The notes under the pieces: generated by a model | What the model was told of the DNA's origin: nothing | The model's database searches: none | What the model saw: only the letters and a program-made list of their open reading frames with translations | In this document: one piece after another, positions 30,287 through 51,492 of the stretch | Layout of the letters: each line of letters starts with the position of its first letter | Numbering within the stretch: position 1 is the stretch's first letter | Program-made: the position numbers and the translations under genes | Assembly: GCA_002269645.1 (NCBI GenBank) | Contig: NIVC01001104.1 | Span: 186,001-250,000 of the forward strand | From: Macrostomum lignano | Taxonomy: Eukaryota | Length of the DNA: 64,000 bases | Reading direction: 5' to 3'

Positions 30287-30985
30287 CAAGGACGACTTAA
30301 GTAGAAGGACGGGAAACCTCGTTTCTTAGAAAATTTTTGAAGGCACTTTTTCCCGAAAAAATACACTGCGGAGATAGGAAATTTTCATTTTTTCAGCACA
30401 AAAATTGCTATAACTTTTGATAGGAGGCAGATCCAGTGTTGATCTTTTGATATGTTGTGCCTTTTTTATTGCTCTATCGATATTTATAAAGCTTTTCGTT
30501 CAGAAAATTAGGATTCTATGTTAATTTTTTATTCTACGTACATTTCCTGTATCTAAAAATCACAAAAATGCATGACACAGCTCTAATATTTGGTTTTATG
30601 AATCTATTTTATCATCTGTGTTACGACTATTTGCTATACAGTCAGGTAAGAAGGATAAAATAGACTCATAAAATCAAAGAGCCAAGCCGTGGCATTCTAA
30701 TGTATTTCAAGCACAAGACACATGAAAATATACGTAGAATAAAAAATTAACATAGAATCCTAATTTTCTGAACGGAAAGCTTTATAAATATCGATAGAGC
30801 AATAAAAAAAGGCACAACATATCAAAAGATCAACACTGGATCTGCCTCCTATCAAAAGTTATAGCAATTTTTGTGCTGAAAAAATGAAAATTTCCTATCT
30901 CCGCAGTGTATTTTTTCGGGAAAAAGTGCCTTCAAAAATTTTCTAGGAAACGAGGTTTCCCGTCCTTCTACTTAAGTCGTCCTTG
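30287..30985. mobile_element. 699-bp foldback MITE with ~255-bp TIRs, CAAGG...CCTTG ends and an 8-bp TSD (hAT- or P-type)
   Basis: 30287-30540 is the near-perfect reverse complement of 30731-30985. Flanks are GTTATAAC / ATTATAAC (7/8 identical). Confidence 0.9.
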
Positions 30986-31069
30986 ATTATAACACTATAG
31001 AGCAAGTATTCATATTTTACTCGTACACTATTGTCTATGGTTTTCGGCAGTAAGACTTTCTGCAAAAAC

Positions 31070-31112
31070 CAAGGACAACTTGATAACTAGTTGATTTATC
31101 AAGTTGTCCTTG
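31070..31112. mobile_element. 43-bp CAAGG-family mini-MITE with a perfect 8-bp TSD
   Basis: 17-bp TIR CAAGGACAACTTGATAA, a 9-bp spacer and the reverse complement, flanked on both sides by GCAAAAAC. Confidence 0.85.
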
Positions 31113-31289
31113 GCAAAAACTTAATTGCTAAACGATGAAAGCGGTCTTTCGCGTCCCTGGGATTTCCCTAGGGAATCCCGGAATTACACTGCGATTTCTA
31201 TTGTCTGCCGGCTGTTTTAGATGGTTGCCGGAAAATTAACGGAAGCATTTGGCTATAGAAAAGAATCGAACATGACAACGACGAACAGC

Positions 31290-31775
31290 AACAAAAGCAA
31301 CGGAGTAATTTTGTTCCTCCGGTAATGGTGTTCACCAGGCGATTGACGGACGGGGATTCCAGGTGCCGTTGAATGGCCGCACGAAAACAGATGAGACTCG
31401 GCGCGTTAGTATGAATTCCATTCTGCTTTCGAAGAGACGAATAGAAAAGCCTCAAATAATCGTTCAAGAATCAATTCGGTAAACGCTCAAACTCTTGGCT
31501 GAGTCCCTTCTCATCGAGGAACTGGCCGAACCTTGCCACGAGAAGTTTTCATTTGAAGTCTCTGTCGATTTCGGCACAGATTCATTCTCAATCCGGTCCA
31601 GCATTTGCAGATCTTCGCTAGTCAGCTAAGGTAGCACTTCGGTACTGGAAGACGCATTCAAATTGTTAATCTCCAGAACAAAGCGATTGCTCGACTCTCG
31701 GGCGACAAAAGCCAACTCGTCTGTGGAGAGTCCACATTTCTCCGCCAGTATGTATTCGTAGCGAATTATAGATCA
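31290..31775 (-). pseudogene. Decayed, 3'-truncated Crypton-like tyrosine recombinase (N-terminal part)
   Basis: The minus strand gives LAEKCGLSTDELAFVARES...LP*LTSEDLQMLDRIENESVPKST / (frameshift) RFGQFLDEKGLSQEFERLPN*FLNDYLRLFYSSLRKQNG...SLICFRAAIQRHL. This is colinear with GEISGLNADELEFVTHQS...FPELNETDLQEITNLEKAAVVQST...AFLGERGLSTDIETMPSRYLCQYLRLWFSTVRKADG...TLVCMRAAIHRFL of the 39320 ORF. It is bounded by TTGTCTATGG (31031) and CCATAGACAA (31903). Confidence 0.8.
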
Positions 31776-33749
31776 TTTTTCTTCGGGTATTTCGACAAAT
31801 CCACTAGAGAATTAATTTATGACAGTTACGCTAGTCGTCTTCACTGTCCTTTCCGATTATCATAAACGATTGACTGATTATCCTTACTGCTATTTCAAAG
31901 TGCCATAGACAACAGAAGAAAATTTGACTATAGAAATCCGGCAACAGTCAATTTCATTCAAAAGGGTAACAATAACGGTATAGACGACAGATTCTTTCAC
32001 GGCAGCAATTGCGTAAGCTGAAGCTGCGTAGCGAAAAAATCCGTATATATCGTTACATTGCTTATTTAATGTCTAGATACATTCAATCACAAAAATATTT
32101 ACCGTATTATTCCTAGATTTCTCGGGCCGAAACATAAATGCAATCATCAGTATGAGGCCCGGAACATTTTGTCTATGGTCGAACTTAATGAATTAATTAT
32201 CGAACTTAATGATAACATATCGCTGGCCGAAATAGCCGAGTAGCCAGAGCTGATCACTTAGGTGTGTCAGGACTCATTGAAACCCTAATAAAAATTTTCG
32301 ACTAAAAGTTGACTAAAAGTCATCTTGTGCAAGCTTCGAATATGACTTTTAGTCAATAATTTGTTACACGAATAATTGAACTCTGGTTCCGTTATTCTCC
32401 AGAATGACTCCGGTTGCCTGATGATGGAGGTCTATACATGATGTCTATACATGTTGACGTTGAATTGATCTTGACGTCGACAGCCACAACAGGACCTTTG
32501 ACGTCGCCGGTTGTAAAAAAGGCGAATCTGCCTGCTGTCACTCCATTCCCTAGTTCAGTGATAGTTTTTTTTTCGGCGGCATCCTTGATTAAATAAACAT
32601 GCACATTTAACGCCGTTCTCTGACGAAATAATTTGATCAGATTTTTTCAGAGATCTGATAGAGTCTGCCACGGAAGCGGAAATGGTACATCACCAAAAAG
32701 AAAACCTTGTCTGAAAGGTCTGTGAATTTTTTCTCATTGTACATTCTGAGCTTGTACATATCGCTGGCCGAAATAGCCGAGTAGCCAGAGCTTGATCACT
32801 TTAGGTGTGTCAGGACTTATTGAAAGTTGGGATAAAAATTCATTTCTTGCCGTTCAAGTCCGATAATTTCTCCTTCTGCAATTCTTGACAAGTTTATCAT
32901 GTTGATTTTTGAACGAATGAATCTTGAACAATAAAGCTTCTGAGTTTTCTACTCGTACTTTACTACACTTTGTCATGTTAAAAATCATATTAAGTGAGAT
33001 TTGTCTATGGTAGTTAGTGCGAGCTTCGTCCCACACCCTCACTGTAGCGGGCCGCGAAATGATAATTTGGCCTGACATTTTATCCCCCACTTGTCCCGGT
33101 CAAATAAGTGTATGGTCTAGTGTTGAAGCATTTATTTGTCCGGGACGAAGAAATATTTATTTGTCCCGGCCGAAGAAACGATTGATGTGGAACTGACAAC
33201 AACAACAAAAATGCCACAAAAAGCAACTATGGTTAACACTAACGCTAATAGACTGATAGTCAATGACAGTAAAGCACTTTTGTCTTTCCCACTCCATAGT
33301 GATCACGACGGTGTTATCATTTCCAGAAACTTCGATTCGCATTTTCTTCGCAGGAGCAGTAGAAACCGTCGTAGACCCAGTTGTCGGAGCGCCTCCAGCA
33401 TCAGGAACAATGGCAACCGTCGTAGTCCCAGTTGTCGGAGCGCCTCCAGCATCACGAGCAGTGGCAACCGTCGGAGTCCTTGAGGTCGAAGCATCTGCAG
33501 CACCTACAGCAGAGCGGCTGATCAGAGCACTGCAGCTCATTTGCTTCTTCACTGACACTCAGCATCAAACAGCAGCTGACACAACAGCATCAAACTATCG
33601 CTATCGCATCAAACTCGGGACTGTTCCGTTTCGATCAGAACCATAGACTGTTGAGCTATAGTTCTTTTTTTCCACAAGACCGAGAGATTATATACTTATC
33701 AGTGGTAAATAGACAACAGGCCACATCACTTCATTTCGGCCCGCTGTTC

Positions 33750-34241
33750 TATTGTACCATGACCTTTGTGCCCGCTGGGCACTTATTCTTGCCTTTTAAT
33801 GCCATAAACTACATTTAAGCCCACTTGCAGGAGTCACACTTACTTTAATGCAAATTAGCGGCCAGTTAATAGTACATTAATACCCATGCTTTAAGGGCGT
33901 TAATGGGAAAATCAGAGGGCGCCGTTAGGCGCCGAGGATTTCTCATTAACGCCCGCAAAGCATGGGTATTACTATCATTGTGCCATAGACATTTGTGTCC
34001 TTGACAAAGTGGGACAAAATTAGCGGGCAGTTAATGATATTAACTGCCCGCTAATTTGCATTAGAGTAAGTGTGACTCCTGCAAGCGGGCTTAAATGTAG
34101 TTTATGGCATTAAAAGGCAAGAATAAGTGCCCAGCGGGCACAAAGGTCATGGTACAATGATAATACAATAATGTGCCCGCCGTTAGGCGCCCTCTGATTT
34201 TCCCATTAACGCCCTTAAAGCATGGGTATTAATGTACTATT
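33750..34241. mobile_element. Nested pair of non-autonomous derivatives of the Crypton-like element (forward copy 33868-34159 inside an inverted copy)
   Basis: The inner copy joins the left-end motifs of 39024-39143 to the right-end motifs of 44219-44413. The outer copy begins TATTGTAC (33750) and ends GTACTATT (34241). Confidence 0.8.
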
Positions 34242-34420
34242 ATATGTCTTAATTTTTTAATATTGGTGTATATTTCGCATAAAACATCAGCATTTAACGG
34301 TTAAACTTACAAATTTAGTCAATGTTCTATTTTCAGATTGTGCTACATCTCTCTTGGATTGCCAGTACCGCAGTCCGCGCGGGATTTTGACGATTGTTCA
34401 ACAACTTTGTTCTGTTCTGC

Positions 34421-34641
<221 letters not shown>

Positions 34642-35150
34642 TCCACACAGAGGACTCAACCGCAAAGGACAGCGGCTTACTGTCGGTAGCGCTTAAGGCA
34701 GAGGTGTGCGGACTTCAGGACAGTACCTGGTAAAATTGCAGACTTCAGTCAGAAAAGTCTATTATATTTGTGTCGAGCACTGGTAATCCAGTATATTGTG
34801 AAACAGCTTGTTCTTTGAATCGCATGTGCTCAGAGTTGTCACAAACAAAATTAAGTTTACCAGTCGACAGGCCACTGATTTCTTGCTCAATGATGCCTTT
34901 TGTAATTCAGCATGGTTTTTTGTTTGTTGGTTTGGTTTAAAGTTGCAATTGTAGCCTCTAGTTTTTTTTCTATTATAAATTTTCTTTTTTGAAAGTCTAT
35001 GGGTCTATGGGCAAGCCCCCCACTAGCCTTACGGAAGCCAGGGGTGAGGAGGGCGGCGAGCCCCCCACATGTGACATCCCCTACCCAACAAGGCAACAAC
35101 TGTATATAGCCCACTAATCTTCTTAGTTCTTAATTACATTTGATTTTGTA

Positions 35151-35905
35151 CAGCTTTTTGCAGCCCATTTGGGCTTACGCGCATATAATTTAATCCAAGA
35201 TACGTTTGCCAATGCAACGGAGCTTTTGTCTATGGTAGCAAGGCTGGCACAGCAGCATTTCATTTCGTCCAACAAGCATCAATTTGGTCCAAACGCTCGT
35301 GAGCCACTGGACAAACTCCTGCCTTCTCGCAACTGTCTGCAGGTTGTTGCGTACCGCTGGAATATCAACAACAGCGTGTCTACCAACCATTTTCAGTCGC
35401 TTTTCCAGAGCTCTGCTGACAGTCAAAATCTGATAACCAACTGGAACTGTTCATTCAGCTTCTGCTGCATTTTCTGAAACGCCAACAAAGGGTTCGTCTC
35501 AACTGCATCGAGTAGCAGTTCGACCTGAGGCTCTCGCAACTTGCCTTGGCGATTGCTACCCTGCCGGCAGAGTTTCAACGCGCTGATGGATGCTGTAAAC
35601 CATCTTTCCTTTTAAATTCAGCAACCTTGCAATGTCCTTTGTGTGCTCACCTCTGTCGAGCGCTTAGATCGCAAGCCAATGGCATTCGTTCGACAGCCTA
35701 GCATATGGTCCACTATTCTGGGGCTGATGTTGCTTTTACGCAGCAGTTGCAGATGAAGCTATGGACCAAATTGATGCTTGTTGGACCAAATTAAATGCCG
35801 CTGTGTCAGCTAGCTTGCTACCATAGACAAAAGCTCCGTTACATTGGCAAACGTATCTTGGATTAAATTCAATGCGCGCAGACCCAAATGGGCTGCTAAA
35901 ATCTA
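35151..35905 (-). mobile_element. Internally deleted Tc1/mariner (IS630-like) element with ~140-bp TIRs and a TA TSD
   Basis: The TIR 35151-35291 matches the reverse complement of 35762-35905, with TA on both flanks. The internal minus strand gives frameshifted HTH-transposase pieces (DIARLLNLK..VYSIHQRV; QVELLLDAVETNPLL..QKMQQKLNEQF; TVSRALEKRLKM..VDIPAVRNNLQTVARRQEFVQW). Confidence 0.75.
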
Positions 35906-36811
35906 TAGTAAAAAAGACTAAGCAAGCAAAGCCAATGTCAGAAACTTGACCAACAGTATAGAAAAGAGTATGTACGAATGCATACCATAGTGTATATCAT
36001 ACTGGAAGCTGTATATACATTAAATTTGTTGCGATTTCGTAAATAATATTAAAGCATTACAATACAGATGAACAAAACAAGGTCAATATCAAAAACTCCC
36101 GCGAGACTCTCGTCCTATAATTGATTAAAGTTATCCTTGACTTGGCTTTAACTTTTTATTTGCATTTGGGGTGCTTTAGACCATAGACGTCTATTATTAG
36201 ATCGTTAGGGGCCTTCCACTGCAGTCACAGTCGAAAAAGGCTACATTTGAAGTTACTCTGAAGTAAGAAGTTAGAAGCAAAGGTAGTCTTTACGATTGTG
36301 CCAAATTCAAGGTTGAAATGGTATAATAAGTGTGTTATTTCTAAGCTGAGCTTAAAGGGAAACAAAGAAAAATTTCAGTCTCAGGAGTCCAGACATTAAT
36401 TTTACATGTGGTTATTTTGTAGTCTGTCGTGCGATTCGTTTTCGATTCGGTTGTTTGTGTGAAACATGCATTAGCAACTCAATCTCAATCGATAAGATTT
36501 TATACGCCACCGCCAAGCTTTCGAGCTAGTATTATAAAATTAAGTGCATTCGCGGCCGGGGCACTGCCGATCTTGCATGAAAATGGCACGCGTGTGCACT
36601 TTCAAATTAATCTGCAAGATAATACTGCACTGTACAGGTACTACTAGCTCGAAGCATTCATGCGGGCGCTATACACATTGCCGATAAGACTTGTGCAGAA
36701 AATTTATACTGAAGCACACTTGAGCCGCGATCATTCTAAGCTGTGTTTCTGTGCGCTATCCTAGCTGTCACGGCTCAGGTTCAGAATTGAGCAAAGCATA
36801 CCGTGCCCGCA

Positions 36812-38451
36812 ATGGGAGAGACGCTGAAACCGCAGCAGCAGCAAACAACGCTGCGTCACTCGCTGACCGTGCCGACGGGCTTTCAAGCCTATCAGAAGCG
36901 GTATTCAACACCGAATCCTCGCCTGCAGGCGACCACCGAGGAGGTGCCGGTGCCGCTGATGAAAGCGGTCAGCTCCGTGCCGCACGAAGGCCTGTCGGCA
37001 CGCAATCCCGTCTGGATGGAGGTTCAAACGGCCCTGATTGACGCGTTTAAGGGTCGTTCGAACCCCAACCTGGGTCATACAGCCCGCTTGGTCCGCCTGC
37101 TCAGCAAGACAGTTTCCACTGGCCTGGTGTTTGACTACCTTGAGAAGAGTCTACTGAAAAAGGGCTTCAAGATTATCTGTAGAAGACTCGATTGCAGCTC
37201 GCAGGATCCCGAGGAGTTGCTCGAATCCATGGAGGCAGCTTGGCGCTTTTTCCACGATCAAGTGGTGACTGAGGTGAAGTGTATTCTCCAGCCCATGGGG
37301 CTGGATCTGCAGTTACTCGAACGAGCTCTCATGCTCGGCTTCCGAGACCAGGTAAGCAAGATACATTTTAAGTTACGTACACGTTTCCATGTTTCCTTGC
37401 CCCTGGCTTAAGGTAAGAATTCCCTGCAGCCTTAGCCGCTCTCAGCCAGTCAACTGCATGAGCCCGTTGTCAGAGTCGAAGTACATTTATAGTGTCCCGT
37501 CGTCAATGAGATTGACAGCTGTGAGAATGTACGCAGATGAGAGTCTGAGAGAGCTAGTGAGACTGAATTGAAGAAGAGTGACGTGGGTGACAATGTCGTA
37601 TTATAGATTACAAAATATAAGGTGTTAAAATAATAAATTAGAACGAAAGCCCATCAAATTCATAATACCAATTCAATATTCCCTAATTCCATGATTCCAT
37701 AACTACAAAGCGTAGCTTTGAAATTTGATAAAATTGCCTGAATACACTTTCGTTGGCTGGTTAAACTATACGTCGACAATCGCATTTCAACGCACTAAAG
37801 GTTCTTCTACCAACGGGACTTCACGGAATTCTGCGCTCCGAGGTAGCCTGCAGTCCAGTCTGCAGCCTGTCGCCCGGCCTCACCCGCATGCTGCTGGTGC
37901 TGCAGATGCATCGGGACTCGGAGCCGCCCAGCGAGAACGACGTCGCCCTCGAGCGTATCGTCGCCCTAACTGTCCGGCCCTACATTGGCTTCTTGGGCGT
38001 CTACAATGGCACCGAGGAGCCGGAGCGGCGAGCCAATCTGCCCGAGCTGGTGAGAACTCGACGCCGGCTCACCCGACGGGCTTTCGTCAGCCGCAGCTCC
38101 GTGTTCCGTCGGGCTGGCGGCGGGTCCTCAGACAGCTCGTCTGCACCGACCGAAGCTGCCGCCTTAGCCAGCGCCGCCGCTGTGTCCAACGGAGCAGTTG
38201 GTCCCGAAGCTGAGGGCATCACCATCGTGTTGACCGACGAGTGCTGCATCGATGGCGATGACGATGATGGCGATGGCGATGACCAGGAGTCCGCTGATGA
38301 GGCCGACGACGATGCTGAGACGACGCCGTCTCTGGAAGTGACGGCGGAGGAGTCTGAAGAACACAAAGATAAGGGCACTGCTGACGAGGCCGCTCTGAGC
38401 AGGGAACGGTACCAGTCCGACCCTGCGCTGAGTCTGCTGGCGCCACAGTGA
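36812..38451 (+). CDS. PRR5: PRR5/PRR5L (Protor, mTORC2-associated; HbrB-like domain) homolog, about 396 aa
   Basis: Exons 36812-37351 (CAG|GTAAGC) and 37801-38451 (ctaaag|GTT), phase 0. The protein contains VWMEVQTALIDAF...DYLEKSLLKKG...LLESMEAAWRFFHDQV...LMLGFRDQ|VLL...RMLLVLQ...LERIVALTVRPYIG, paralleling PRR5 (WNSIHNGVIAVF...EYLQNQLLTKG...LLDSLAETWDFF...QMLLVLQ...VVSPYLG, from memory). The tail is acidic. Confidence 0.85.
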
Positions 38452-39319
38452 TATTTGTGTGAAACCATTGCATGGCTTCAGTAGGATAAGAAGCCAATTA
38501 TTTGAACGCAAATAGATTATTACCAGTAATAGATACACAAAGCTTTTTAGATACGAATATTCAACGATCAATTCGAGACAGGAAGTTCCAGATAGGGAAA
38601 ATTTGCATATGAGGCGGCACCTTCACAACCTTTCGACACTCGCACGTCTGTGAATTCCAGTTTTTGAGGAAGGACTCATTAAAGTTGAATGTATACATGT
38701 GCAGTTTGTTAAGTTAGAATGCACATAAATTATAGCAGTGCGAAAGATTCAATTTAGAAAAATGAAAAAAATTAAAGTCGTAAAGTATCTCCGCTTTTCT
38801 CCCTTCGCTCCCTCTTTTCTCTTCTCTCCGCTCTTCTCGCTTCTCTCCTCACTCCCCTTTTCTCTCCTCTCTCCCCTCCTGATCTCTCCTCAGAACTCGA
38901 AAAATGTCAAAAGTTTTTTAAAGTCATTCCTTTCGAAAGTGTGACAATTAAAGCCAATTTGAACAATCAGAGGGTGAGAAAGGGTTTGGGTTACAAGCAA
39001 GGTAAATCCAGAAATACTAAAAGAATAGTACATTAATACCTTAATACATTAATAAATAAATAAATAAATAATTAATACATTAATAGCATGGGTATTATTA
39101 TTATTGTGCCATAGACATTTGTGTCCTTGACAAAGTGGGACAAATAATACGAGTAGAAAGGGGGTGTGGGGGCGAAGCCCCCACCAAAAGCCATAGACAA
39201 AACACGAAATAAGATTTTAGCAGTAGTACAGTACTAACTTAAGCAGAGAAGAGAAGAGATTAGACTTATCACACCACATACTGCATAAGGTTTGACTAAG
39301 ACAAACTAGATCTAGAAGC

Positions 39320-40702
39320 ATGATCAACTATAGCGGTATCGCAGAGGGCGAGATAAGTGGATTGAATGCTGATGAATTGGAATTTGTAACTCATCAATCT
39401 GCTGGACGCAGTCATGAATCGGCTGTCTCACAATACGACGGACTTCCATTGGTCGACTCGAGACGCATCAACGAGTTCCTTCTAAACGTGACGGAGTTTC
39501 CTGAACTGAACGAGACGGACCTCCAGGAGATAACTAATCTGGAGAAGGCTGCCGTTGTACAATCAACAGAGAAGCAGACGGACGCCTACTCTGGAAGACT
39601 GAAGGCTTTTCTGGGTGAAAGAGGTCTTTCCACTGACATAGAGACTATGCCCTCGAGGTATTTATGCCAGTACCTGAGACTCTGGTTTTCTACTGTACGG
39701 AAAGCTGACGGCTCCGCCTACAGTTGCAGCACGCTAGTTTGCATGAGGGCTGCTATTCATCGTTTTCTGCTGGCCAAGCGGGGTCTGTCTCTGATTGGGA
39801 ATCCCGACTTCCTTGAACTAGAAAAAACCTTCAAGGCCGCTCTGACGTATTCACTTAAGCAGCCTACTTCCGTGGTTGACGGCGACGGTGGATACCGAGC
39901 TATTGACGTCGTTGACTTGGCCAAGCTGTCTGCGTATTTCGACCGGACTGATCCTAAGAAGCTGCAACACGAGACGTTCTTCCTGATTGTGTATCACTTT
40001 GGATTCAGGGGACGTGAGTGGATTCGATCTCTGGACAAAAATGATGTGGTTGTGAGGCGTCGCGATGGAAAAGTGGAATGTATCGACCTTGCGAAGGAAA
40101 AAAGGGAGAAGAACGTCTCGGCCAGAAGTGCAAGCACGAAGAAGGATATTGGTATATTCCCGGTGGCGGACGAAGCCAAGTGTCCTGTTCAGGCAGTGAT
40201 GCTCTACCTGTCTAAACTGCCGGAGGAGAATTCAAGCCTGTTTCCTAAGCCTCGAGCGAAATGGACCGACAGGGAGTGGTACTGCAAGAAAGAAGTCATC
40301 GGCAAGAACACCCTGGCCGAGCTAATGAAAGAATCTAAAGCTGCCGGCCTTTCCTACATGTACACTAATCATTGCATCCGCTCGACAATGATCACGAACC
40401 TGTCGGAGCAAGGTTTCAATCCGGAGCAGATCCAGACCGTCTCCGGTCACAAGAAGGTTGAAAGCGTGCTTCGCTATACGAAACGAGTCTCGGTGGAACA
40501 GAAGCGCAGTCTGTCGAGTGCAATGACGTCCGGCTTGCATGGTCTGGAGGATGAAGTCCCACTGAAGCGCGCGGACTTGGATCTATCGCCTGCTTCTAGT
40601 GCGTCCAAGGGCGAGTCCACACCTACTGAGTCGAATGAGCGTCAGGGGGACCCGACTGTCGTGTTGGAAAAAAACGGCCTAAAGGTGTCCATCTTTATGT
40701 AG
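39320..40702 (+). CDS. Crypton-type (DUF3504-like) tyrosine recombinase, intact 460-aa intronless ORF
   Basis: The catalytic set is present: R in HFGFRGRE, HxxR in YTNHCIRST, H in VSGHK and Y in SVLRY. It also carries KCPV..V.LYLSKLP and IGKNTL, typical of CryptonA/DUF3504 proteins. Confidence 0.92.
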   Translation: MINYSGIAEGEISGLNADELEFVTHQSAGRSHESAVSQYDGLPLVDSRRINEFLLNVTEFPELNETDLQEITNLEKAAVVQSTEKQTDAYSGRLKAFLGERGLSTDIETMPSRYLCQYLRLWFSTVRKADGSAYSCSTLVCMRAAIHRFLLAKRGLSLIGNPDFLELEKTFKAALTYSLKQPTSVVDGDGGYRAIDVVDLAKLSAYFDRTDPKKLQHETFFLIVYHFGFRGREWIRSLDKNDVVVRRRDGKVECIDLAKEKREKNVSARSASTKKDIGIFPVADEAKCPVQAVMLYLSKLPEENSSLFPKPRAKWTDREWYCKKEVIGKNTLAELMKESKAAGLSYMYTNHCIRSTMITNLSEQGFNPEQIQTVSGHKKVESVLRYTKRVSVEQKRSLSSAMTSGLHGLEDEVPLKRADLDLSPASSASKGESTPTESNERQGDPTVVLEKNGLKVSIFM

Positions 40703-40837
40703 CAGGTAAGTGTAACTGCTGGATTGAATAAATTGACTCTATTGATTGAATTAAATTGACAATTGTTGTTTTGTTTTTGTTGCATTTATGTTCTAGTTGT
40801 GGGACGATGAGCCAGTAAGTAGTATAGGAAAAAATGC

Positions 40838-42540
40838 GAGCGAAGCGAGAATTTTTTTCTATGCTGCTTACTTTTGCGAAATCGTCCCTGATAAGATGTA
40901 ACGCCGTTGCACACACTAAAAATGACGTTTTTCAACTTTTAAACGCTGCCAATAAAAAACGGTACGACCGATTTACAAACAGTTTTTGCCAAAATGTGTC
41001 AAAGACCTAGCGCTATCGGATGCACAATATTTGGTTGCCATGGCAACGCGTTTTGGTTGCCATGGCAACCAAAAACTGCGTTTTTTCTACATTGTCAAAA
41101 AATTTGATCTCAAAAAATAAGGATTGAGAATATGGCAGCGCTTAGCGAGTGGGCTCAGCAGACGCGGGCATTCGAACGCTAAAATGATCAGAAATGGATT
41201 TTTTGATTGTACTTTCACTTCACAGGTAAAAGTACAAAAAACGTGTTTTTTGAGGTCGAAAAATTGGCATTTTTTTCAACTTTGCCTCACCGCAGCGAAA
41301 AGGACGCGCGATAGCACGGCCTTTGAGCTGCCTCATAGCGTCAATAACACCTGGGGCTGTTTGATGCGCTATAGTTTTTAGGGCTAAAATGTACTTTTCA
41401 CATGGCTGCCTATCTGCTGTTTAAAAGTACAAATTTTTAGTGCACTTTTGTGAGGCCTATGGCGTCGAGATGGAAAACTTTATTTTTTAATATTTCTACA
41501 CCAAATTACTCAAATGGATGTCTTCTATTCGGAAACATTGAGATTTGGCCGATTGGGCCATCAATAACCTGCCTAGGTGCCAAAGAGTGCCTAAAAACGA
41601 CATTTTCGAAAAATTGGGTCACGTTTTCAAAAAGTAGTCCCCAAAAATAAGGAAGCGTTTTATGCTACGGTGTTGAGACTTTAACACGACGTGTCAAACA
41701 TTTGGAAATTTGTTTTCCTGAATTTTCTAAGCATTGGGACCTACCTGTGCTGAGCAGTGACCCGGAAACCAGGGAAAAAAGAGGCCGGGGGCTCTGCAGA
41801 AAATCAAACGTTGTTAAGGAAATTTTTTTAAAATGGGGCGAATTTTTTCGAGTGTAGTGTCAAATTGTAGCCCATCGGATGCCCTTTTGAATGACATAAG
41901 ACACTCCTGAAAAAACCCCTGTTAACAGGTACTTTTTACCTGTTAAGTGAAAAACGGCCCATTTGGGGGTACAAACTTTGAAGTCGAAAAATAAGAATTT
42001 TTGCGCACCGATTTTTCTGCATTTTCAATATTGTTTAGTCGAATAGCTAAAGTTACACCGGTCATACGCCAATATGGCTGGAAAATTCGTATTTTTGAGA
42101 AAATTGGCTCCGAATTTTTAGAAGGCTATTTTTGGGCAAATTTTGAGCATACTTTTGCTAATAACTCTGCATTGGCAAGGCCTAGAGACTCAATTTTGGT
42201 GTCTAAAAACAGCACTATGGATGCACTGTGCAACTAAACTAGTTTTGAAAACTGATTCTTAAGTTAATAGGTCTTAATACCTGTTTGAATACCTGTCAGA
42301 ACAGGTGAAAATGCACAATTTGGCGCCTAGGAGGCGTAAAATTTGTTGACATACTTTAAAAATGCATTAGATGAATGCGCCTTGATGTTATCTCTGTAAC
42401 GACATGCAACTCGCATTTTTAGATGAAGGCGCTGCGATGCAGCGAGCAGAAATGTATGAAAAAGCAGCAAAAATCGTAAAAGTGGCTACCATAGGGAATA
42501 TTCGATATAAAGGGCGTGCACTGTAGAGCTTCGCTTAAGC
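40838..42540. mobile_element. Non-coding ~1.7-kb segment, probably a non-autonomous DNA element (possibly Helentron-type) inserted in the YR element
   Basis: No credible ORF. It has short inverted AGCGAAGC/GCTTCGCT motifs near both ends and two tandem GGTTGCCATGGCAAC palindromes (about 41034-41070). Class and boundaries are inferred. Confidence 0.3.
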
Positions 42541-42547
42541 AAGAGAT

Positions 42548-42625
42548 GGATCGGGGCCGAAGGCAGTTGCTTTGTAAATGCCCTAAACACGGGTTCGAAT
42601 CCCAAGTGGGCCAAGTTTTTTTTTT
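42548..42625 (+). pseudogene. Degenerate tRNA-like sequence followed by a T run
   Basis: B-box GGTTCGAATCCC (42592-42603), a TTGTAAA anticodon-loop-like heptamer (Tyr GTA) and an oligo-T tract. The acceptor stem does not pair, so it is not a functional tRNA. Confidence 0.35.
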
Positions 42626-43004
42626 AAATTTAATTTTTTTAGCAGGAACGGATTTATTAGTATTTTCAATTCTCTTTCACTTGAATATAATTTAATATTG
42701 ATTGTTTAATTTTCATTTCCTTCTATACCTTATTAAAGAGTAAGAGTGAAGCTGAAAGTGCGGCACAGATGATTTGTTAGTGCAGAAAAAATATTACGAT
42801 ACATATCGGCAAGTATCATGTGTTGCGCGGTCGCCAAAGGCTTACAAGCAGTTTTAGCATGCTAAAAAGATGTGTTAGAGGTGAGAAGAGTTGCGGAGGG
42901 GTGGGGTGGGGGAGCGGGGTGTGGGGGCGGCAGCCCCCACGTTACGCAAACCCCACAACAACAACCACCCTCCCCAACAACAACGCGCGGGAGGGGTGGG
43001 GGAG

Positions 43005-44080
43005 CGGGGGTGTGGGGGCGGCCAGCCCCCCACTATACCACTAGAAAAACTAATGCCAGGGGCGTGGGGGGCGGCCAGCCCCCCACTATACCACTAGACT
43101 AACTAATGCCAGGGGCGTGGGGGGCGGCTAGCCCCCCACTATACCACTATACCACTAGACTAACTAATGCCAGGGGCGTGGGGGCGGCCAGCCCCCCACT
43201 ATACCACTAGAAAAACTAATGCCAGGGGCGTGGGGGGCGGCTAGCCCCTACTATACCACAAGACTAACTAATGCCAGGGGCGTGGGGGGCGGCCAGCCCC
43301 CACTATACCACTAGACTAACTAATGCCAGGGGCGTGGGGGGCGGCCAGCCCCCCACTATACCACTAGACTAACTAATGCCAGGGGCGTGGGGGGCGGCCA
43401 GCCCCCACTATACCACTAGACTAACTAATGCCAGGGGCGTGGGGGGCGGCAAGCCCCCCCCACTATACGAGCGTACCACTAGAAGAACTAATGCCAGGGG
43501 CGTGGGGGCGGCTAGCCCCCACTATACCACTAGACTAACTAATGCCAGGGGTGTGGGGGCGGCCAGCCCCCCACTATACCACTAGACTAACTAATGCCAG
43601 GGGCGTGGGGGGCGGCCAGCCCCCCCTATACCACTAGACTAACTAATGCCAGGGGCGTGGGGGGCGGCAAGCCCCCCACTATACGAGCGTACCACTAGAC
43701 TAACTAATGCCAGGGGCGTGGGGGGCGGCCAGCCCCCCACTATACCACTAGACTAACTAATGCCAGGGGCGTGGGGGCGGCCAGCCCCCACTATACCACT
43801 AGACTAACTAATGCCAGGGGCGTGGGGGGCGGCCAGCCCCCACTACACCACTAGACTAACTAATGCCAGGGGCGTGGGGGCGGCCAGCCCCCACTATACC
43901 ACTAGACTAACTAATGCCAGGGGCGTGGGGGGCGGCGAGCCCCCACTATACCACTAGACTAACTAATGCCAGGGGCGTGGGGGCGGCCAGCCCCCCACTA
44001 TACCACTAGACTAACTAATGCCAGGGGCGTGGGGGCGGCCAGCCCCCCACTAGACCACTAGACTAACTAATGCCAGGGGC
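43005..44080. repeat. ~52-bp GC-rich minisatellite CCACTAGACTAACTAATGCCAGGGGCGTGGGGGGCGGCCAGCCCCCACTATA, about 21 copies
   Basis: Visible units, each with a GTGGGGG/CCCCCAC stem. Degenerate precursor units occur at 42895-43030. Confidence 0.96.
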
Positions 44081-44751
44081 ATATGTCATAGCCATAAAAG
44101 GATAAAAACACAATATATAAACCATCGTCCCACCTTTGAAGACGACAGCGTCTTCATTCACTAGTCTTCACATGTTTCATGCTGAGTCGTTCTACAAATA
44201 AAGCGGTTGTGTAACTGTCTGCAAATTAGCGGGCAGTTAATGTCATTATCTGCCCGCGTTTAATGTCATTAACTGCCCGCTAATTTGCATTAAAGTAAGG
44301 TTGACATAGACTGTTTGTTCGATATTTCTTTCCTGCAAGCGGGCTTTAATGTAGTCTATGGCATTAAAAGGCAAGAATAAGTGCCCAGCGGGCACAAAGG
44401 TCATGGTACAATAAGATTTGTCACCAAAATTGAGAATCTGTGGCACAAAGTTTAAAACCGTGATAAAATATAAAAGTAAAAAATGCTGTATAAAGTCATT
44501 TCAATCAAAGGGCGATTGCAAAATCTATTCTCGCTGGTTCCTCGCTTTGCACATCGCCAGTAAGTAATATACCTGCACAGTATTATGAAGATTTAGATCG
44601 CACAACAAAGGCAAATCTATTACTGGATATTAGTCTGTGACCTGCACGCTTTGTGCCTTGCTGTACTTTGCTGTAAGCTTCCTCGAGCATTACAGACTGA
44701 CGGCGCGGAACTTCAGCTGCTTCATTGAGGCTTTCAGTTGACAATTCAACC

Positions 44752-45085
44752 GCACCAATCGATGTCTCCAGCTGGGAGCCGCTAGCAGCCGTGGCAGCAG
44801 CACCTGCACCAATCGATGTCTCCAGCTGGGAGCCGCTAGCAGCCGTGGCAGCAGCACCTGCACCAATCGATGTCTCCAGCTGGGAGCCGCTAGCAGCCGT
44901 GGCAGCAGCACCTGCACCAATCGATGTCTCCAGCTGGGAGCCGCTAGCAGCCGTGGCAGCAGCACCTGCACCAATCGATGTCTCCAGCTGGGAGCCGCTA
45001 GCAGCCGTGGCAGCAGCACCTGCACCAATCGATGTCTCCAGCTGGGAGAGCCGCTAGTAGCCGTGGCAGCAGCACCTGCACCAAT
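44752..45085. repeat. 54-bp tandem repeat, about 6 copies, open as an 18-aa repeat
   Basis: GCACCAATCGATGTCTCCAGCTGGGAGCCGCTAGCAGCCGTGGCAGCAGCACCT repeated almost perfectly. Confidence 0.95.
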
Positions 45086-45393
45086 CGATGGCTCTGCTAT
45101 CTTTGGCACCTGATTGGCACATAGCTGACACCACCAACTTATCTATCTGTAGCTCGCCTGGGGTATGTAAAATAAAAATTAAAAAATACCATGCATGTAC
45201 ATGTAAATCTGCTTCAATAATTGTTAGATCCATACCTTTCCGTATCTGAATGCACTGCTGATTAGTAATTCCTGTCTGACATTTTCGATGTTGCCATCCC
45301 CCGCATCCATCACAGTTGATATGGCATGCTGACGACTACTTACAACTTTTTCACACAGTAGACATAAATCACTACTGTTGGATCCATATACAT

Positions 45394-49622: not shown

Positions 49623-50027
49623 CGAACAGAATTTATTTCAACCTATTAAATACTGTGTAGACGACAAAATCACGTATTGAAAAGATATAAAAGGACTAAA
49701 GGATCAATGTACAGTATAGCAATGTTCATAATATTTTTTGTGGAATGACAGGACAGAGAAAAAAGAGAGAGAGAGAGAATGAGGCGTATGCGCCCCAAAT
49801 GTACTCTAGCTTAAAACACCAATAGCTGTTCACTTGCACCTCCTCCAGATAGTTGGACATTGAGAGTGGGTTTGTGTAACTTAATGTGCAGAGCTTCAAG
49901 AATGTTAAGTTTATGCTCATTTTTGCTGTTGTCTATGACCTTGAAATGAGAGGTTATGTCTGGCTCATCACAACAACCATGGCATTGCAGCAAATGTTCA
50001 TGAATCGGAGAGTTTCTTTTTGTCTTT

Positions 50028-51492
50028 AAATGTGTACAAGAAGATTATGCCGTGTGGGAGTCAACCTGGCCAACTCTATGGCTCGTGCAAGGTCCATAAG
50101 GAAGACAAACCATTGAGACCCATTGTGTCTATGCTGAACACGGCTGAATATGAGCTGGCTAAATTTCTAGACTCATTTATCAAGCCATGCATCCCTCAGG
50201 AATTCAGTTTGCGGTCCAATAGGGAATTCATAACAGCCATCAGCAATTACACCCCATCTCGCAAAGATCAATTGTATAGCTTCGATGTCACCTCTCTATT
50301 TACCAATGTTCCGCTGAATCTGGCGATCGACATTGCTACCAATTTGGTCTTCAAAGACAACCCAGCGCCACCAATCCCGGAGAAAGTGTTTAAGAAATTG
50401 TTGGTTATTGCCACGTCTGGGATATTCCAATTCGGCGATAAGTATTTCCAGCAAATTGACGGCTGCGCTATGGGCAGCCCTCTTGCCCCCACTCTTGCTA
50501 ACGTTTGCATGTCACATTGGGAGAAAACCTGGAGGGAAAAAAGCTGTGCTCCAAAATTTTACAAACGGTATGTCGATGACACATGCGCTATTTTTGATAA
50601 CGAGGAAGACTTTCTGCAATTTTTCAACACAATAAACGCCACCCATCCTAACATTAAATTCACCGTGGAATATGGTGGAAAGAAACTACCGTTTCTTGAC
50701 ATCGAGATCCATCTGAAGGACTGCGCTATTGAGACCAAAGTGTATCGCAAGCCCACATTCACTAAATTGATGCTTAATTTCCAGGCGTTGTGCCCCAGGG
50801 AATGGAAGACGGGAGTCATTCGTTGTCTGCTTCATCGTGCCTATACAGTATGTTGCTCTTGGTCGTTGCTGCACAACGAGTTTACCAACATTATCAATAT
50901 TCTCACTGCCAATGGATACCCTATCAACTACATCATGAAGGTTATTGGTAATTTCTTAGATGAAAAAATTGAAAAAAAGCTTAAACCTAAGCGGCCAGAT
51001 AGAGAACCAGGAGAACCAATCTTGACTCTTCCTTTTTTGGGCAACTCTTCGATTGTGTTTAAGAGGCAAATTCGCAAAACTTGCCAAAAATTCTTTAAGA
51101 CTAAGATTCATGTAGTGTTCCGTACTCATAAAGTCAGTCAATTTGTTGGGAGTTTAAAGTCTCGTGTTCCATGTGCTCTCAAGGCAGGTGTCATCTATCG
51201 TTTTCGTTGCTCTGTTGACCAGAGCATTACCTACATTGGTAAAACCAAGCGACACCTACGCACGAGAGCCAAGGAACATAGGCAACGAAACTCTCCGATT
51301 CATGAACATTTGCTGCAATGCCATGGTTGTTGTGATGAGCCAGACATAACCTCTCATTTCAAGGTCATAGACAACAGCAAAAATGAGCATAAACTTAACA
51401 TTCTTGAAGCTCTGCACATTAAGTTACACAAACCCACTCTCAATGTCCAACTATCTGGAGGAGGTGCAAGTGAACAGCTATTGGTGTTTTAA
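50028..51492 (+). CDS. Penelope-like reverse transcriptase plus GIY-YIG endonuclease (N-terminally truncated, frame intact)
   Basis: RT motifs LYGSCKVHK, LRPIVS, FDVTSLFTNVP, GCAMGSPLAP, RYVDDT, LPFLD and YRKPT. GIY-YIG motifs GVIYRFRC...YIGKTKRHLRTRAKEH and ILEALHI...PTLN. Confidence 0.93.

What the first reader, a model, noticed from the sequence alone, without database searches (positions are those of the whole stretch)
39024..44413. Crypton-like tyrosine-recombinase transposon with definable ends and a 4-bp AATA crossover core
Seen: an intact 460-aa YR ORF with the R, HxxR, H and Y catalytic residues. The 120 bp before it (AATAGTACATTAATACC...AGCATGGGTATT...GTGCCATAGACATTTGTGTCCTTGACAAAGTGGGACAAA) and a block 3.5 kb downstream (44219-44413, ending GGTCATGGTACAATA) both recur, fused, at 33868-34159, which fixes the two ends. 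AATA lies at both termini. Joining the ends would give ...TGGTAC-AATA-GTACAT..., a GTAC inverted pair around an asymmetric core. Established: Cryptons encode a YR, carry short terminal direct repeats and are thought to move via excised circles; YR sites are inverted arms around an asymmetric spacer. Inference: this is a near-complete, possibly active element whose recombination site can be read directly.
Basis: partly seen in the sequence, partly recalled or inferred. Interest (0 to 1): 0.85.

Follow-up and report, generated by a model that had tools for sequence, protein, structure and literature searches.

The report
Crypton transposon with palindromic junction site
A flatworm-type genome window holds three copies of a tyrosine-recombinase (Crypton-like) DNA transposon that inserts at the trinucleotide AAT. 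When its two ends are joined they form one arm of a long conserved palindrome, an end structure not found in the Crypton literature I could search.

Summary
Window 39024-44413 is a 5,390-bp element with an intact 460-aa tyrosine recombinase (YR). It starts AATAGTAC and ends GGTACAATA. Both end blocks recur fused at 33868-34159.

- The fused copy is a 292-bp non-autonomous element. It is nested inside a second, 204-bp derivative of opposite orientation (33750-33867 plus 34160-34243).
- The true left end is a hairpin of about 115 nt with a GC-rich tip and a GTTA loop.
- The about 24 nt after that hairpin are an inverted copy of the right terminus. A joined right-left junction therefore lies inside one arm of a palindrome of about 150 bp.

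This architecture, and AAT(A/G) at both ends, recurs in 17 divergent relatives (35-45% protein identity) from metagenome contigs. Compensatory changes are strong (35 of 41 pairs; 0/500 shuffles). One relative contig shows the right-AAT-left join in a tandem array.

The GTAC dyad is family-specific and is not the conserved site. The ORF-bearing copy has lost the conserved hairpin tip and carries about 3.3 kb of extra non-coding DNA, so its own mobility is doubtful.

Verdict: a real CryptonA-like element and a new structural variant. The geometry recalls the DIRS-1 internal complementary region. The mechanism (double- or single-stranded) is unresolved.

The parts
39024..44413 (+). ORF-bearing ('full-length') element, 5,390 bp, AATA at both ends
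   Evidence: Homology to the other copies starts at 39024 and ends at 44412/44413.
39024..39040 (+). Left terminus: core AATA plus the first 13 nt of the hairpin 5' arm (remnant)
   Evidence: 17/17 identical to 33868-33884.
39041..39084 (+). AT-rich (TACATTAA)n repeat that replaces the conserved hairpin interior and tip
   Evidence: Tandem Repeats Finder reports period 8 over 29029-39085 region, i.e. 39029-39085. The alignment with the small copy shows the replacement. The covariance model scores this left end only 19 bits.
39085..39126 (+). Remnant of the hairpin 3' arm, followed by the internal inverted copy of the junction (ATT at 39103-39105, then the complement of the right tail)
   Evidence: rc(39100-39126) = GGACACAAATGTCTATGGCACAAT against the right end GGGCACAAAGGTC-ATGGTACAAT.
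39320..40702 (+). Tyrosine recombinase ORF, 460 aa, catalytic residues intact
40703..42879 (.). Non-coding filler of unknown origin, absent from relatives
   Evidence: No ORF above 85 aa and no family hit. No other copy in the window. No tRNA or Rfam match.
42880..44080 (.). G-rich stretch followed by a 52-bp x 20 tandem array inside the element
   Evidence: Tandem Repeats Finder, 43006-44080, score 1669. A related unit lies outside the element at 35020-35068 (D4).
44220..44289 (+). Right subterminal palindrome carrying three copies of the arm motif GCGGGCAGTTAATG
   Evidence: I9. Motif copies at 44229+, 44244-, 44267-.
44331..44413 (+). Right terminal block ending GGTCATGGTACAATA
   Evidence: 80/83 identical to the small copy.
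33868..34159 (+). 292-bp non-autonomous 'mini' element (left end fused to right end), ends AATA...AATG
33868..33982 (+). Complete left hairpin of the mini element (5' arm 33872-33923, loop GTTA 33924-33927, 3' arm)
   Evidence: Covariance model 100.8 bits, E 5.6e-20. Junction fold -54.6 kcal/mol, z -8.5.
33977..34001 (+). Internal inverted copy of the junction in the mini element (ATT plus the complement of the right tail)
34017..34060 (+). Right subterminal palindrome of the mini element (two inverted arm motifs)
33750..33871 (-). Right part of a 204-bp 'micro' element of opposite orientation, split by the mini element
   Evidence: 118/121 complementary to 34038-34158. Reconstruction.
34160..34243 (-). 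Left part of the micro element (26 nt plus the 5' arm, which is 57/57 identical to the mini element's 5' arm)
   Evidence: (I4).

Best explanation
This is a family of CryptonA-like DNA transposons in a Macrostomum-like flatworm genome. The only gene is a tyrosine recombinase (YR).

The window holds three copies:
- one ORF-bearing copy at 39024-44413;
- a 292-bp deletion derivative;
- a 204-bp deletion derivative, with the 292-bp copy inserted into it.

The elements most likely move by YR-catalysed site-specific recombination. The two ends are joined at a shared AAT, and the joined molecule recombines with an AAT(A/G) in the target. One AAT is left at each end and no target duplication is made.

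The recombination site is not a short dyad around the crossover. It is a composite:
- The left end is an imperfect hairpin or palindrome of about 115 nt, with a GC-rich tip, a GTTA loop and a conserved purine-rich internal loop.
- The about 24 nt after the hairpin are an inverted copy of the right terminus. Once the ends are joined, the crossover point lies inside one arm of a palindrome of about 150 bp.
- A short motif from the hairpin arms (here GCGGGCAGTTAATG) is repeated as a palindrome just inside the right end. It probably serves as accessory binding sites that bring the two ends together.

Shown: the ends, AAT, the hairpin, the junction complement, the arm-motif repeats, nesting, tandem joins, and intact catalytic residues.

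Inferred: the circular intermediate, cleavage at AAT, the role of the palindrome, and whether the palindrome acts as duplex, cruciform or folded single strand.

The ORF-bearing copy has lost the hairpin tip. It is probably not mobile itself, but it could supply recombinase to the small copies.
For: - Ends and AAT in the window: three left and three right ends with unrelated flanks.
- Ends and AAT in relatives, from independent insertions: the P0006 family has AATATATC... to ...GAGAAT(A/A/G); P0002 has AATAGTT... to ...GAACAATA; P0012 has AATGTAGG... to ...CAGAAT(G/T).
- YR: Phage_integrase 2e-11, and 19-sequence alignment columns invariant at R230, R232, K264, H351, R354 and Y386. The closest named relative is KIAA1958-like, and PF12012 is recorded on many relatives.
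- No other gene. Relatives are 2-kb elements with one ORF.
- Hairpin: the covariance model hits the + strand upstream of the YR gene in every relative locus that has upstream DNA. That includes 6 families not used to build the model, at 90-106 bits for those with a full-length match and 30 bits for one match cut by a contig end (L022).
- Junction complement: each family's post-hairpin segment matches its own right tail (mean score 14, minimum 11). Other families' tails score 6.5 +/- 1.9, and the family's own upstream flank scores 5-10.
- Folding: reconstructed junctions fold into one continuous stem, -49 to -64 kcal/mol, z -8.5 to -18. That is 9-19 kcal/mol better than with the genomic flank in place of the right tail.
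- Covariation: 83.9% of cells paired against 59.2% in shuffles, 35 of 41 pairs with compensatory changes, and 0 of 500 shuffles reaching any of the five measures. Slid controls score 0.10-0.16 against 0.63. The helix formed by the right tail shows compensatory change at 11 of 11 pairs.
- Arm-motif repeats near the right end.
- Insertion into or next to other copies at AAT: window, L001, L007.
- A right-AAT-left join in a tandem array: L011.
Against: - No circle junction or empty site could be looked for in the source genome. Only three copies are in the window.
- All relatives come from short metagenome contigs of unknown organisms, some of them visibly chimeric (L001 end, L026 end).
- Termini of 6 of the 10 families used for the junction tests are inferred from geometry, not from independent flanks.
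- Inverted repeats in duplex DNA give the same 'covariation' as a folded strand, so the structural state is open.
- An alignment-based count gave G.T 12 against A.C 11 on the top strand, so there is no strand-specific folding signal.
- A 3-4-nt shared core is shorter than the 6-8-bp overlap of classical YR sites.
- The architecture was not seen at the two more distant relatives examined (Ptychodera at 30% identity; P0021 at 25% identity).
Confidence: 0.72

Rival explanations
1. The site is a canonical short YR core, two GTAC-containing inverted arms around an asymmetric 4-bp AATA spacer. The rest of the ends is incidental.
For: In this family the joined ends read GGTAC-AATA-GTACAT. L001a (TTAC-AAT-GTAA) and P0002/L004 (GAAC-AATA-GTTA) also show a weak local dyad.
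Against: - Six of ten families have no dyad at the junction: P0006 TGAG-AATA-TATC, P0014 ATAC-AATA-TAAG, P0012, L007, L008 and L026.
- What is conserved and covaries is the long palindrome centred about 50-56 nt away.
- A 4-bp spacer with 4-bp arms is far below the 11-13-bp arms and 6-8-bp spacer quoted for YR sites (PMC3212892).
Confidence: 0.08
2. Single-strand version. One strand of the joined element folds into the long hairpin, and the stem rebuilds a duplex-like site. The YR then exchanges only one strand with the target AAT, and replication resolves the product. This would parallel integron attC sites and the CTX phage attachment site (both from established knowledge). In the integrated copy, the same internal complement could splint the two ends of one strand for excision.
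For: - The crossover lies inside the stem, and the right tail pairs with the post-hairpin segment.
- Only 3 nt are shared between element and target, as expected if there is no overlap region.
- Unpaired purine positions (AGA/GAG) and the loop orientation are conserved. The + strand scores about 35-55 bits above the - strand.
- DIRS-1, the other eukaryotic YR element with a junction complement, has single-stranded intermediates (PMC7192593).
Against: - There is no wobble bias: G.T 12 against A.C 11. The earlier 12:2 count was a method artefact.
- No gene is encoded for making single strands.
- Duplex inverted binding sites explain the covariation equally well.
Confidence: 0.3
3. An RT-less derivative of a DIRS-like retroelement. 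It would be mobilised through RNA and cDNA by a reverse transcriptase supplied in trans, with the junction complement acting as the template that restores the termini, as proposed for the DIRS-1 ICR.
For: The geometry is the same as the DIRS-1 ICR: an internal segment complementary to both extremities, and a trinucleotide at the junction (PMC7192593). A Penelope-like RT is present elsewhere in the window.
Against: - No RT, RNase H or methyltransferase in the element or in any 2-kb relative.
- The YR is of the DUF3504/Crypton type, which DIRS YRs do not match (PMC3212892).
- The right tail and its complement differ at 4 positions plus 1 indel. Yet the three right tails are identical to each other and the two complements are identical to each other, so the termini are not recopied from the complement at each cycle.
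- Conserved mismatches between the hairpin arms argue the same way.
Confidence: 0.05
4. The hairpin is a promoter, origin or other regulatory structure. The mobile unit is defined only by ordinary subterminal inverted repeats (the post-hairpin segment and the right end). The 5' arm is a passenger duplication.
For: The hairpin lies 170-370 nt upstream of the ATG in all families. The post-hairpin segment and the right terminus are inverted repeats.
Against: - Homology between independent insertions begins at the outer base of the 5' arm, not at the post-hairpin segment.
- The 204-bp derivative keeps the 5' arm but not the 3' arm.
- The arm motif is repeated at the right end.
Confidence: 0.07

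Closest known systems
Crypton DNA transposons, animal group CryptonA (Goodwin et al. 2003; Kojima & Jurka 2011, PMC3212892)
   Same: - The single gene is a YR of DUF3504/KIAA1958-like type, with no C-terminal extra domain and no RT or DDE transposase.
- Non-autonomous deletion derivatives exist.
- A short sequence is shared by both ends and the target, and there is no target-site duplication.
   Different: [quoted passage not shown] A 2026 review still cites only TATGG for CryptonS and says the mechanism is untested (PMC13565253).
- Here both ends carry AAT(A/G).
- The left end is a conserved hairpin of about 115 nt.
- An internal inverted copy of the joined ends follows the hairpin.
- Arm motifs are repeated at the right end.
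DIRS-1 internal complementary region (Cappello et al. 1985; PMC7192593)
   Same: [quoted passage not shown] A trinucleotide at the junction is found on both sides of integrated copies. New copies tend to insert into pre-existing copies. A YR performs integration.
   Different: - DIRS-1 is a retroelement with gag, RT/RNase H and methyltransferase and about 300-bp inverted LTRs. Its ICR lies near the right end and is an exact complement.
- Here there is no RT.
- The complement lies next to the left end and continues into a hairpin.
- It is imperfect (4 mismatches plus 1 indel in 24 nt), and the differences are inherited.
- The YR lineage is different.
Folded single-strand YR sites: integron attC and CTX-phage attP(+) (established knowledge, not tested here)
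   Same: An imperfect palindrome of about 60-150 nt whose stem carries the crossover point. Unpaired positions and orientation are conserved, while the sequence is poorly conserved but the pairing is kept. Only about 3 nt are shared with the partner site.
   Different: Those are bacterial, use IntI or XerCD, and have proven single-strand substrates. Here no evidence distinguishes a folded strand from duplex DNA.
Tn1549/Tn916-type integrases (closest solved structures, 6emz)
   Same: Weak sequence match over the HxxR...Y region (E 0.0095, residues 339-396). These are circle-forming YR transposons that tolerate heterology next to the crossover.
   Different: Bacterial conjugative transposons with 6-7-bp coupling sequences and an Xis partner. 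There is no overall homology.

Membership tests
Crypton (YR-only DNA transposon) | Encodes a tyrosine recombinase with the catalytic R..K..HxxR..H..Y residues | tested here: met
   Phage_integrase 2.1e-11. R230/R232, K264, H351, R354 and Y386 are invariant in 19 sequences, and H377 is present.
Crypton (YR-only DNA transposon) | No reverse transcriptase or other transposase in the element | tested here: met
   The only ORF of 100 aa or more inside 39024-44413 is the YR, and the small ORFs are uninformative. Relatives are about 2-kb single-ORF elements.
Crypton (YR-only DNA transposon) | Short direct repeat at both termini that matches the target, with no target-site duplication | tested here: met
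   AAT(A/G) at both ends of all three window copies and of the P0006, P0002 and P0012 insertions. An empty site was not available.
Crypton (YR-only DNA transposon) | Multiple copies with identical ends at different loci (mobility) | tested here: met
   Three copies in the window, 96-100% identical in the shared blocks. There are 2-3 independent insertions in each of three relative families.
Crypton (YR-only DNA transposon) | Extrachromosomal circular intermediate | not testable with these tools
   The only evidence is a right-AAT-left join in a tandem array (L011). No reads from the source organism were available.
CryptonA subgroup | YR clusters with animal Cryptons and DUF3504 genes in a phylogeny with Repbase references | not tested
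   Repbase sequences are not held. Indirect support only: a DUF3504 hit below cut-off (24.9 vs 29.7 bits), PF12012 recorded on 10 of the 22 hits in that search, and KIAA1958-like as the best named hit.
DIRS-like retrotransposon | RT/RNase H (and methyltransferase) genes | tested here: not met
DIRS-like retrotransposon | Internal region complementary to both extremities (ICR) | tested here: met
   The complement is imperfect and lies next to the left end.
DIRS-like retrotransposon | Long inverted terminal repeats | tested here: not met
   Only about 24 nt of the right terminus are repeated, subterminally, on the left.
Folded single-strand YR site (attC / CTX attP type) | One specific strand folds and is the substrate | tested here: inconclusive
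   Asymmetry is conserved, but there is no G.T against A.C bias.

The most novel reading that the evidence does not exclude
Animal Cryptons of this lineage may recombine through a long folded or cruciform palindrome in which an internal complement holds the two termini together. That would be the same logic as the DIRS-1 ICR and bacterial folded att sites. It would mean the junction complement serves the recombinase step itself, possibly on single-stranded DNA. It would also be a shared, ancestral or convergent, feature of eukaryotic YR elements with and without reverse transcriptase.
Probability: 0.3. Interest if true: 0.85.

Novelty: new variant of a known kind. Interest (0 to 1): 0.66.

Why it matters
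Crypton transposition has never been shown experimentally. Animal Cryptons have been described as lacking any terminal repeats, which makes them hard to delimit and annotate.

A conserved and easily searchable end architecture gives three things:
- a practical signature for finding autonomous and non-autonomous copies: AAT ends, a hairpin with a GTTA tip, a junction complement and arm-motif repeats;
- a concrete substrate for biochemical tests, since a 292-bp natural mini element carries all the cis parts;
- a structural bridge to DIRS retroelements, whose essential ICR has the same geometry.

Crypton recombinases were domesticated several times into vertebrate genes (KCTD1, ZMYM2-4, QRICH1, KIAA1958). 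Knowing what DNA structure the ancestral enzyme recognised may help to understand those proteins.

Tried and rejected
- **Wobble bias.** Counted on minimum-free-energy structures, G.T exceeded A.C by 12:2 on the coding strand. An alignment-based recount gave 12:11, so the first result was a method artefact. I draw no single-strand inference from it.
- **'Flipped loop' (TAAC) in the outer copy.** I first read it as a sign of inversion. Reconstruction shows the outer copy is a deletion derivative in which the 5' arm tip is joined to the right palindrome.
- **Hairpin-telomere (protelomerase-like) reading of the GC-rich GTTA centre.** Rejected, because the integrated ends lie about 50-56 nt from the centre.
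- **tRNA-like or SINE reading of 42520-42620.** No tRNA and no Rfam family was found. Two sub-threshold miRNA hits on the right palindrome are chance.
- **Ptychodera KIAA1958-like locus and the P0021 locus (25-30% identity).** No comparable hairpin. The architecture is therefore shown only for relatives at 35% identity or more.
- **Scan of viral contigs for the tip motif.** 118 hits, none in a hairpin context, so all are chance.
- **Contig L026.** It ends in a right-end / hairpin / inverted-right-end palindrome. Contig L001 ends in a 100% inverted repeat. I treat both as possible assembly chimeras and do not use them as evidence.
- **BLAST of the element against the window.** No further copies of the 2.2-kb filler.
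- **Literature.** Searches for Crypton with hairpin, termini or Macrostomum found no description of this architecture. Repbase Reports are not in the library.

Full report
**What is in the window**

The window is eukaryotic. It holds a Penelope-like RT + GIY-YIG ORF and an amino-acid-permease exon. That exon is 91% identical to a Macrostomum lignano protein, so the host is a Macrostomum-like flatworm.

At 39320-40702 there is an uninterrupted 460-aa ORF. It matches Pfam Phage_integrase (2.1e-11) and, below the cut-off, DUF3504. In an alignment with 18 relatives, R230/R232, K264, H351, R354 and Y386 are invariant. H377 is present.

The nearest relatives are unnamed 449-493-aa proteins at 35-45% identity from metagenome and Logan contigs. 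The nearest named relative is 'KIAA1958-like' of Ptychodera. KIAA1958 is one of the genes derived from animal Cryptons (PMC3212892). A profile search finds 15,503 cluster representatives at E <= 0.001 and 1,498 at E <= 1e-30, so the protein family is large.

**The ends**

- The left 15-mer and the right 14-mer each occur three times in 64 kb (0 of 100 shuffles).
- Alignments show homology beginning exactly at AATAGTAC, with flanks ...ctaaaag, ...ccagtt and ...acatat.
- Homology ends exactly after GGTACAAT, followed by A, G or A and then unrelated sequence.
- The 'fused' copy at 33868-34159 is a 292-bp non-autonomous element.
- The region around it reads inverted right end, left end, right end, inverted left end (I1, 121 nt at 98%; I4, 57 nt at 100%).
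- Removing the 292-bp copy and keeping one AATA leaves a coherent 204-bp element of opposite orientation. It consists of the 5' arm, 26 nt, half of the right palindrome and the right end.
- The 292-bp copy sits at a TATT (= AATA) in the loop of that palindrome.
- The window thus holds three copies, 96-100% identical in the shared blocks. That argues for recent movement of the small ones.

**The left end is a hairpin, and the joined ends lie inside it**

In the 292-bp copy the left end reads AATA, a 52-nt arm, GTTA, then a complementary arm. The next about 24 nt (ATTGTGCCATAGACATTTGTGTCC) are an inverted, imperfect copy of the right terminus (GGGCACAAAGGTCATGGTACAAT).

Written out, the reverse complement of that internal segment is GTCTATGGCACAATGATAG---TAATACCCATGC. 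The right end joined to the left end gives GTC-ATGGTACAATAGTACATTAATACCCATGC. Once the ends are joined, the crossover point is therefore embedded in one arm of a palindrome of about 150 bp whose axis is the GTTA loop.

**The same architecture in relatives**

I fetched DNA for relatives. Every family with upstream sequence has the hairpin 170-370 nt before the ATG. It has a GC-rich tip, a GTTA loop (sometimes GTAA, GATA or GTA) and, in many families, the motif ..AATCAGAGGGCGxC GTTA GxCGCCCGAGGATTT...

A covariance model built from 11 families finds the hairpin on the gene's strand in all of them. It also finds it in six families not used to build the model, at 90-106 bits for those with a full-length match and 30 bits for one match cut by a contig end. 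It finds nothing comparable elsewhere in the window.

In ten families where the right end is on the contig:
- The post-hairpin segment matches that family's own right tail (mean score 14, minimum 11). Other families' tails score 6.5 +/- 1.9, and the family's own upstream flank scores 5-10.
- Reconstructed junctions fold into one continuous stem of 54-68 pairs (pair counts), -49 to -64 kcal/mol, z -8.5 to -18. That is 9-19 kcal/mol better than when the genomic flank replaces the right tail.
- On the ten-family alignment, 35 of 41 consensus pairs show compensatory changes.
- 83.9% of cells pair, against 59.2% in shuffles (0/500).
- Sliding the partner by 1-3 columns drops the covariation score from 0.63 to 0.10-0.16.
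- The helix formed by the right tail has compensatory changes at all 11 pairs.

**AAT**

Independent insertions fix the ends in three relative families:
- P0006: AATATATCAATAGTAC... to ...GCGTGAGAAT + A/A/G.
- P0002: AATAGTTATTT... to ...GAACAATA.
- P0012: AATGTAGGAATAG... to ...CAGAAT + G/T.

In the other families the point where complementarity switches from the 5' arm to the right tail also falls on AAT. The fourth base can differ between the two ends of one insertion, so the strict shared core is AAT. Flanks are AT-rich but otherwise unrelated.

Six of the ten junction sequences printed show no dyad at the junction (my reading of those sequences).

**Further cis elements**

The motif GCGGGCAGTTAATG is related to both hairpin arms (AAGGGCGTTAATGG and its complement). 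It occurs as a palindrome just inside the right end of each copy. There are 6 hits in the window, all inside the elements, against 0.47 expected. Relatives have the equivalent, with their own arm motif.

**Evidence for joined ends and self-targeting**

- Contig L011 is a tandem array (period 1,203 bp, units 97% identical, YR decayed). In it the right tail is joined to the left end through one AAT: ATAGCTCGTTTG-AAT-GGAGGAATAATAC.
- In L001 and L007, an element of a different family begins on the very AAT that ends the preceding element.
- Together with the nested pair in the window, this gives three cases of insertion into or next to a resident copy at AAT.
- This is what a circle recombining with a half-site would produce. 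It recalls the preference of DIRS-1 for pre-existing copies (PMC7192593).

**State of the ORF-bearing copy**

- Its left end keeps the first 17 nt, the base of the 3' arm and the junction complement.
- The about 73-nt interior, including the tip conserved in all families, is replaced by 44 nt of (TACATTAA)n.
- The junction fold drops from -54.6 to -20.3 kcal/mol. The hairpin model scores 19 bits (E 0.55) against 101 bits.
- Between the stop codon and the right end there are 3,711 bp, against about 190-440 bp in relatives.
- That stretch consists of 2.2 kb with no ORF, RNA family or other copy in the window, plus a 52-bp x 20 satellite.
- The ORF is intact. It may supply recombinase in trans, but this copy's own mobility is doubtful.

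**How it most likely works**

Shown: a YR-only element with AAT at both ends, a conserved and covarying palindrome that spans the joined ends, arm-motif repeats at the right end, and tandem and nested joins at AAT.

Inferred: the YR joins the ends at AAT into a circle and recombines that junction with a target AAT. The palindrome and the arm motifs form the recognition and synapsis site.

Whether the palindrome works as duplex DNA, as a cruciform or as a folded single strand is open. A 3-nt core, a crossover inside a stem and conserved unpaired purines fit a folded-strand, one-strand-exchange mechanism of the attC/CTX type. However, an unbiased count shows no G.T over A.C excess (12:11), and an apparent 12:2 excess was a method artefact.

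A DIRS-like templating role for the internal complement is unlikely. The right tail and its complement differ at 4 positions plus 1 indel, yet each is identical among copies. There is also no RT.

**Comparison with what is known**

By gene content and behaviour this is a Crypton, and by its recombinase it is probably CryptonA. A phylogeny with Repbase references was not possible.

- The 2011 survey reports no terminal repeats for animal Cryptons (PMC3212892).
- A 2026 review states that the mechanism is untested and cites only TATGG for CryptonS (PMC13565253).
- I found no description of a hairpin or a junction complement in Cryptons.
- The nearest structural analogue is the DIRS-1 ICR, which is complementary to both extremities and essential for retrotransposition. 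Integrated DIRS elements are also flanked by a species-specific trinucleotide (PMC7192593).

**Verdict**

The finding is real and largely correct in its observation. Its interpretation needs three corrections:
- the conserved site is the long palindrome, not the GTAC dyad;
- the strict core is AAT;
- the long copy is damaged.

It is a new structural variant of a known kind. It is of moderate to high interest, because it gives Cryptons a testable cis architecture and links them to DIRS elements.

Noticed in passing
window 50020-51492 (+): A 490-aa ORF with RVT_1 (9.7e-13) and GIY-YIG (1.9e-5) domains. This is a Penelope-like retroelement.
   Followed up: partly
window 2112-3140 (-): An amino-acid-permease exon, 91% identical to a Macrostomum lignano protein. 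This is what identifies the host lineage.
   Followed up: partly
window 44752-45094: A 54-bp x 6.3 tandem repeat (98% matches) about 340 bp beyond the element's right end. It is open in both strands, with mirror ORFs of 110 and 139 aa.
   Followed up: no
window 43006-44080 and 35020-35068: The 52-bp satellite unit inside the element (GGGGCGTGGGGGGCGGCCAGCCCCCC...) has a related single unit outside the element. A similar GC hairpin sits at about 39160-39185. Its origin and relation to the transposon are unknown.
   Followed up: partly
window 35144-35309 and 35744-35912: Two adjoining inverted-repeat pairs (99 nt at 89%, 67 nt at 82%) about 0.5 kb apart. This may be a foldback or terminal-inverted-repeat element unrelated to the Crypton.
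   Followed up: no
window 34411-34643: A (TCTG)58 microsatellite 170 bp downstream of the nested small elements.
   Followed up: no
window 38788-38892: A CT-rich low-complexity tract just upstream of the long element's insertion site.
   Followed up: no
L001 1-2068 and 2066-3985: Two YR elements of different families lie head to tail. The second starts on the AATA that ends the first. The contig end (3983-4068) is a 100% inverted copy of 2788-2873, probably an assembly chimera.
   Followed up: partly
L026 1975-2151: After the right end comes AATA, then a tip-deleted hairpin, then a 98% inverted copy of the right end (right end / hairpin / inverted right end). It is either a real palindromic rearrangement like the window's nested pair or an assembler artefact.
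   Followed up: partly
L011 1-1506: A tandem array of a decayed 1.2-kb derivative (period 1,203 bp, 97% identity) with the right end joined to the left end through one AAT.
   Followed up: yes
L028 3279-3357: A perfect 38-bp-arm palindrome 640 nt upstream of a distant (25% identity) DUF3504 YR gene on a 1.9-Mb contig. There is no GTTA tip and no clear junction complement. Whether it is a divergent version of the same architecture is unknown.
   Followed up: partly
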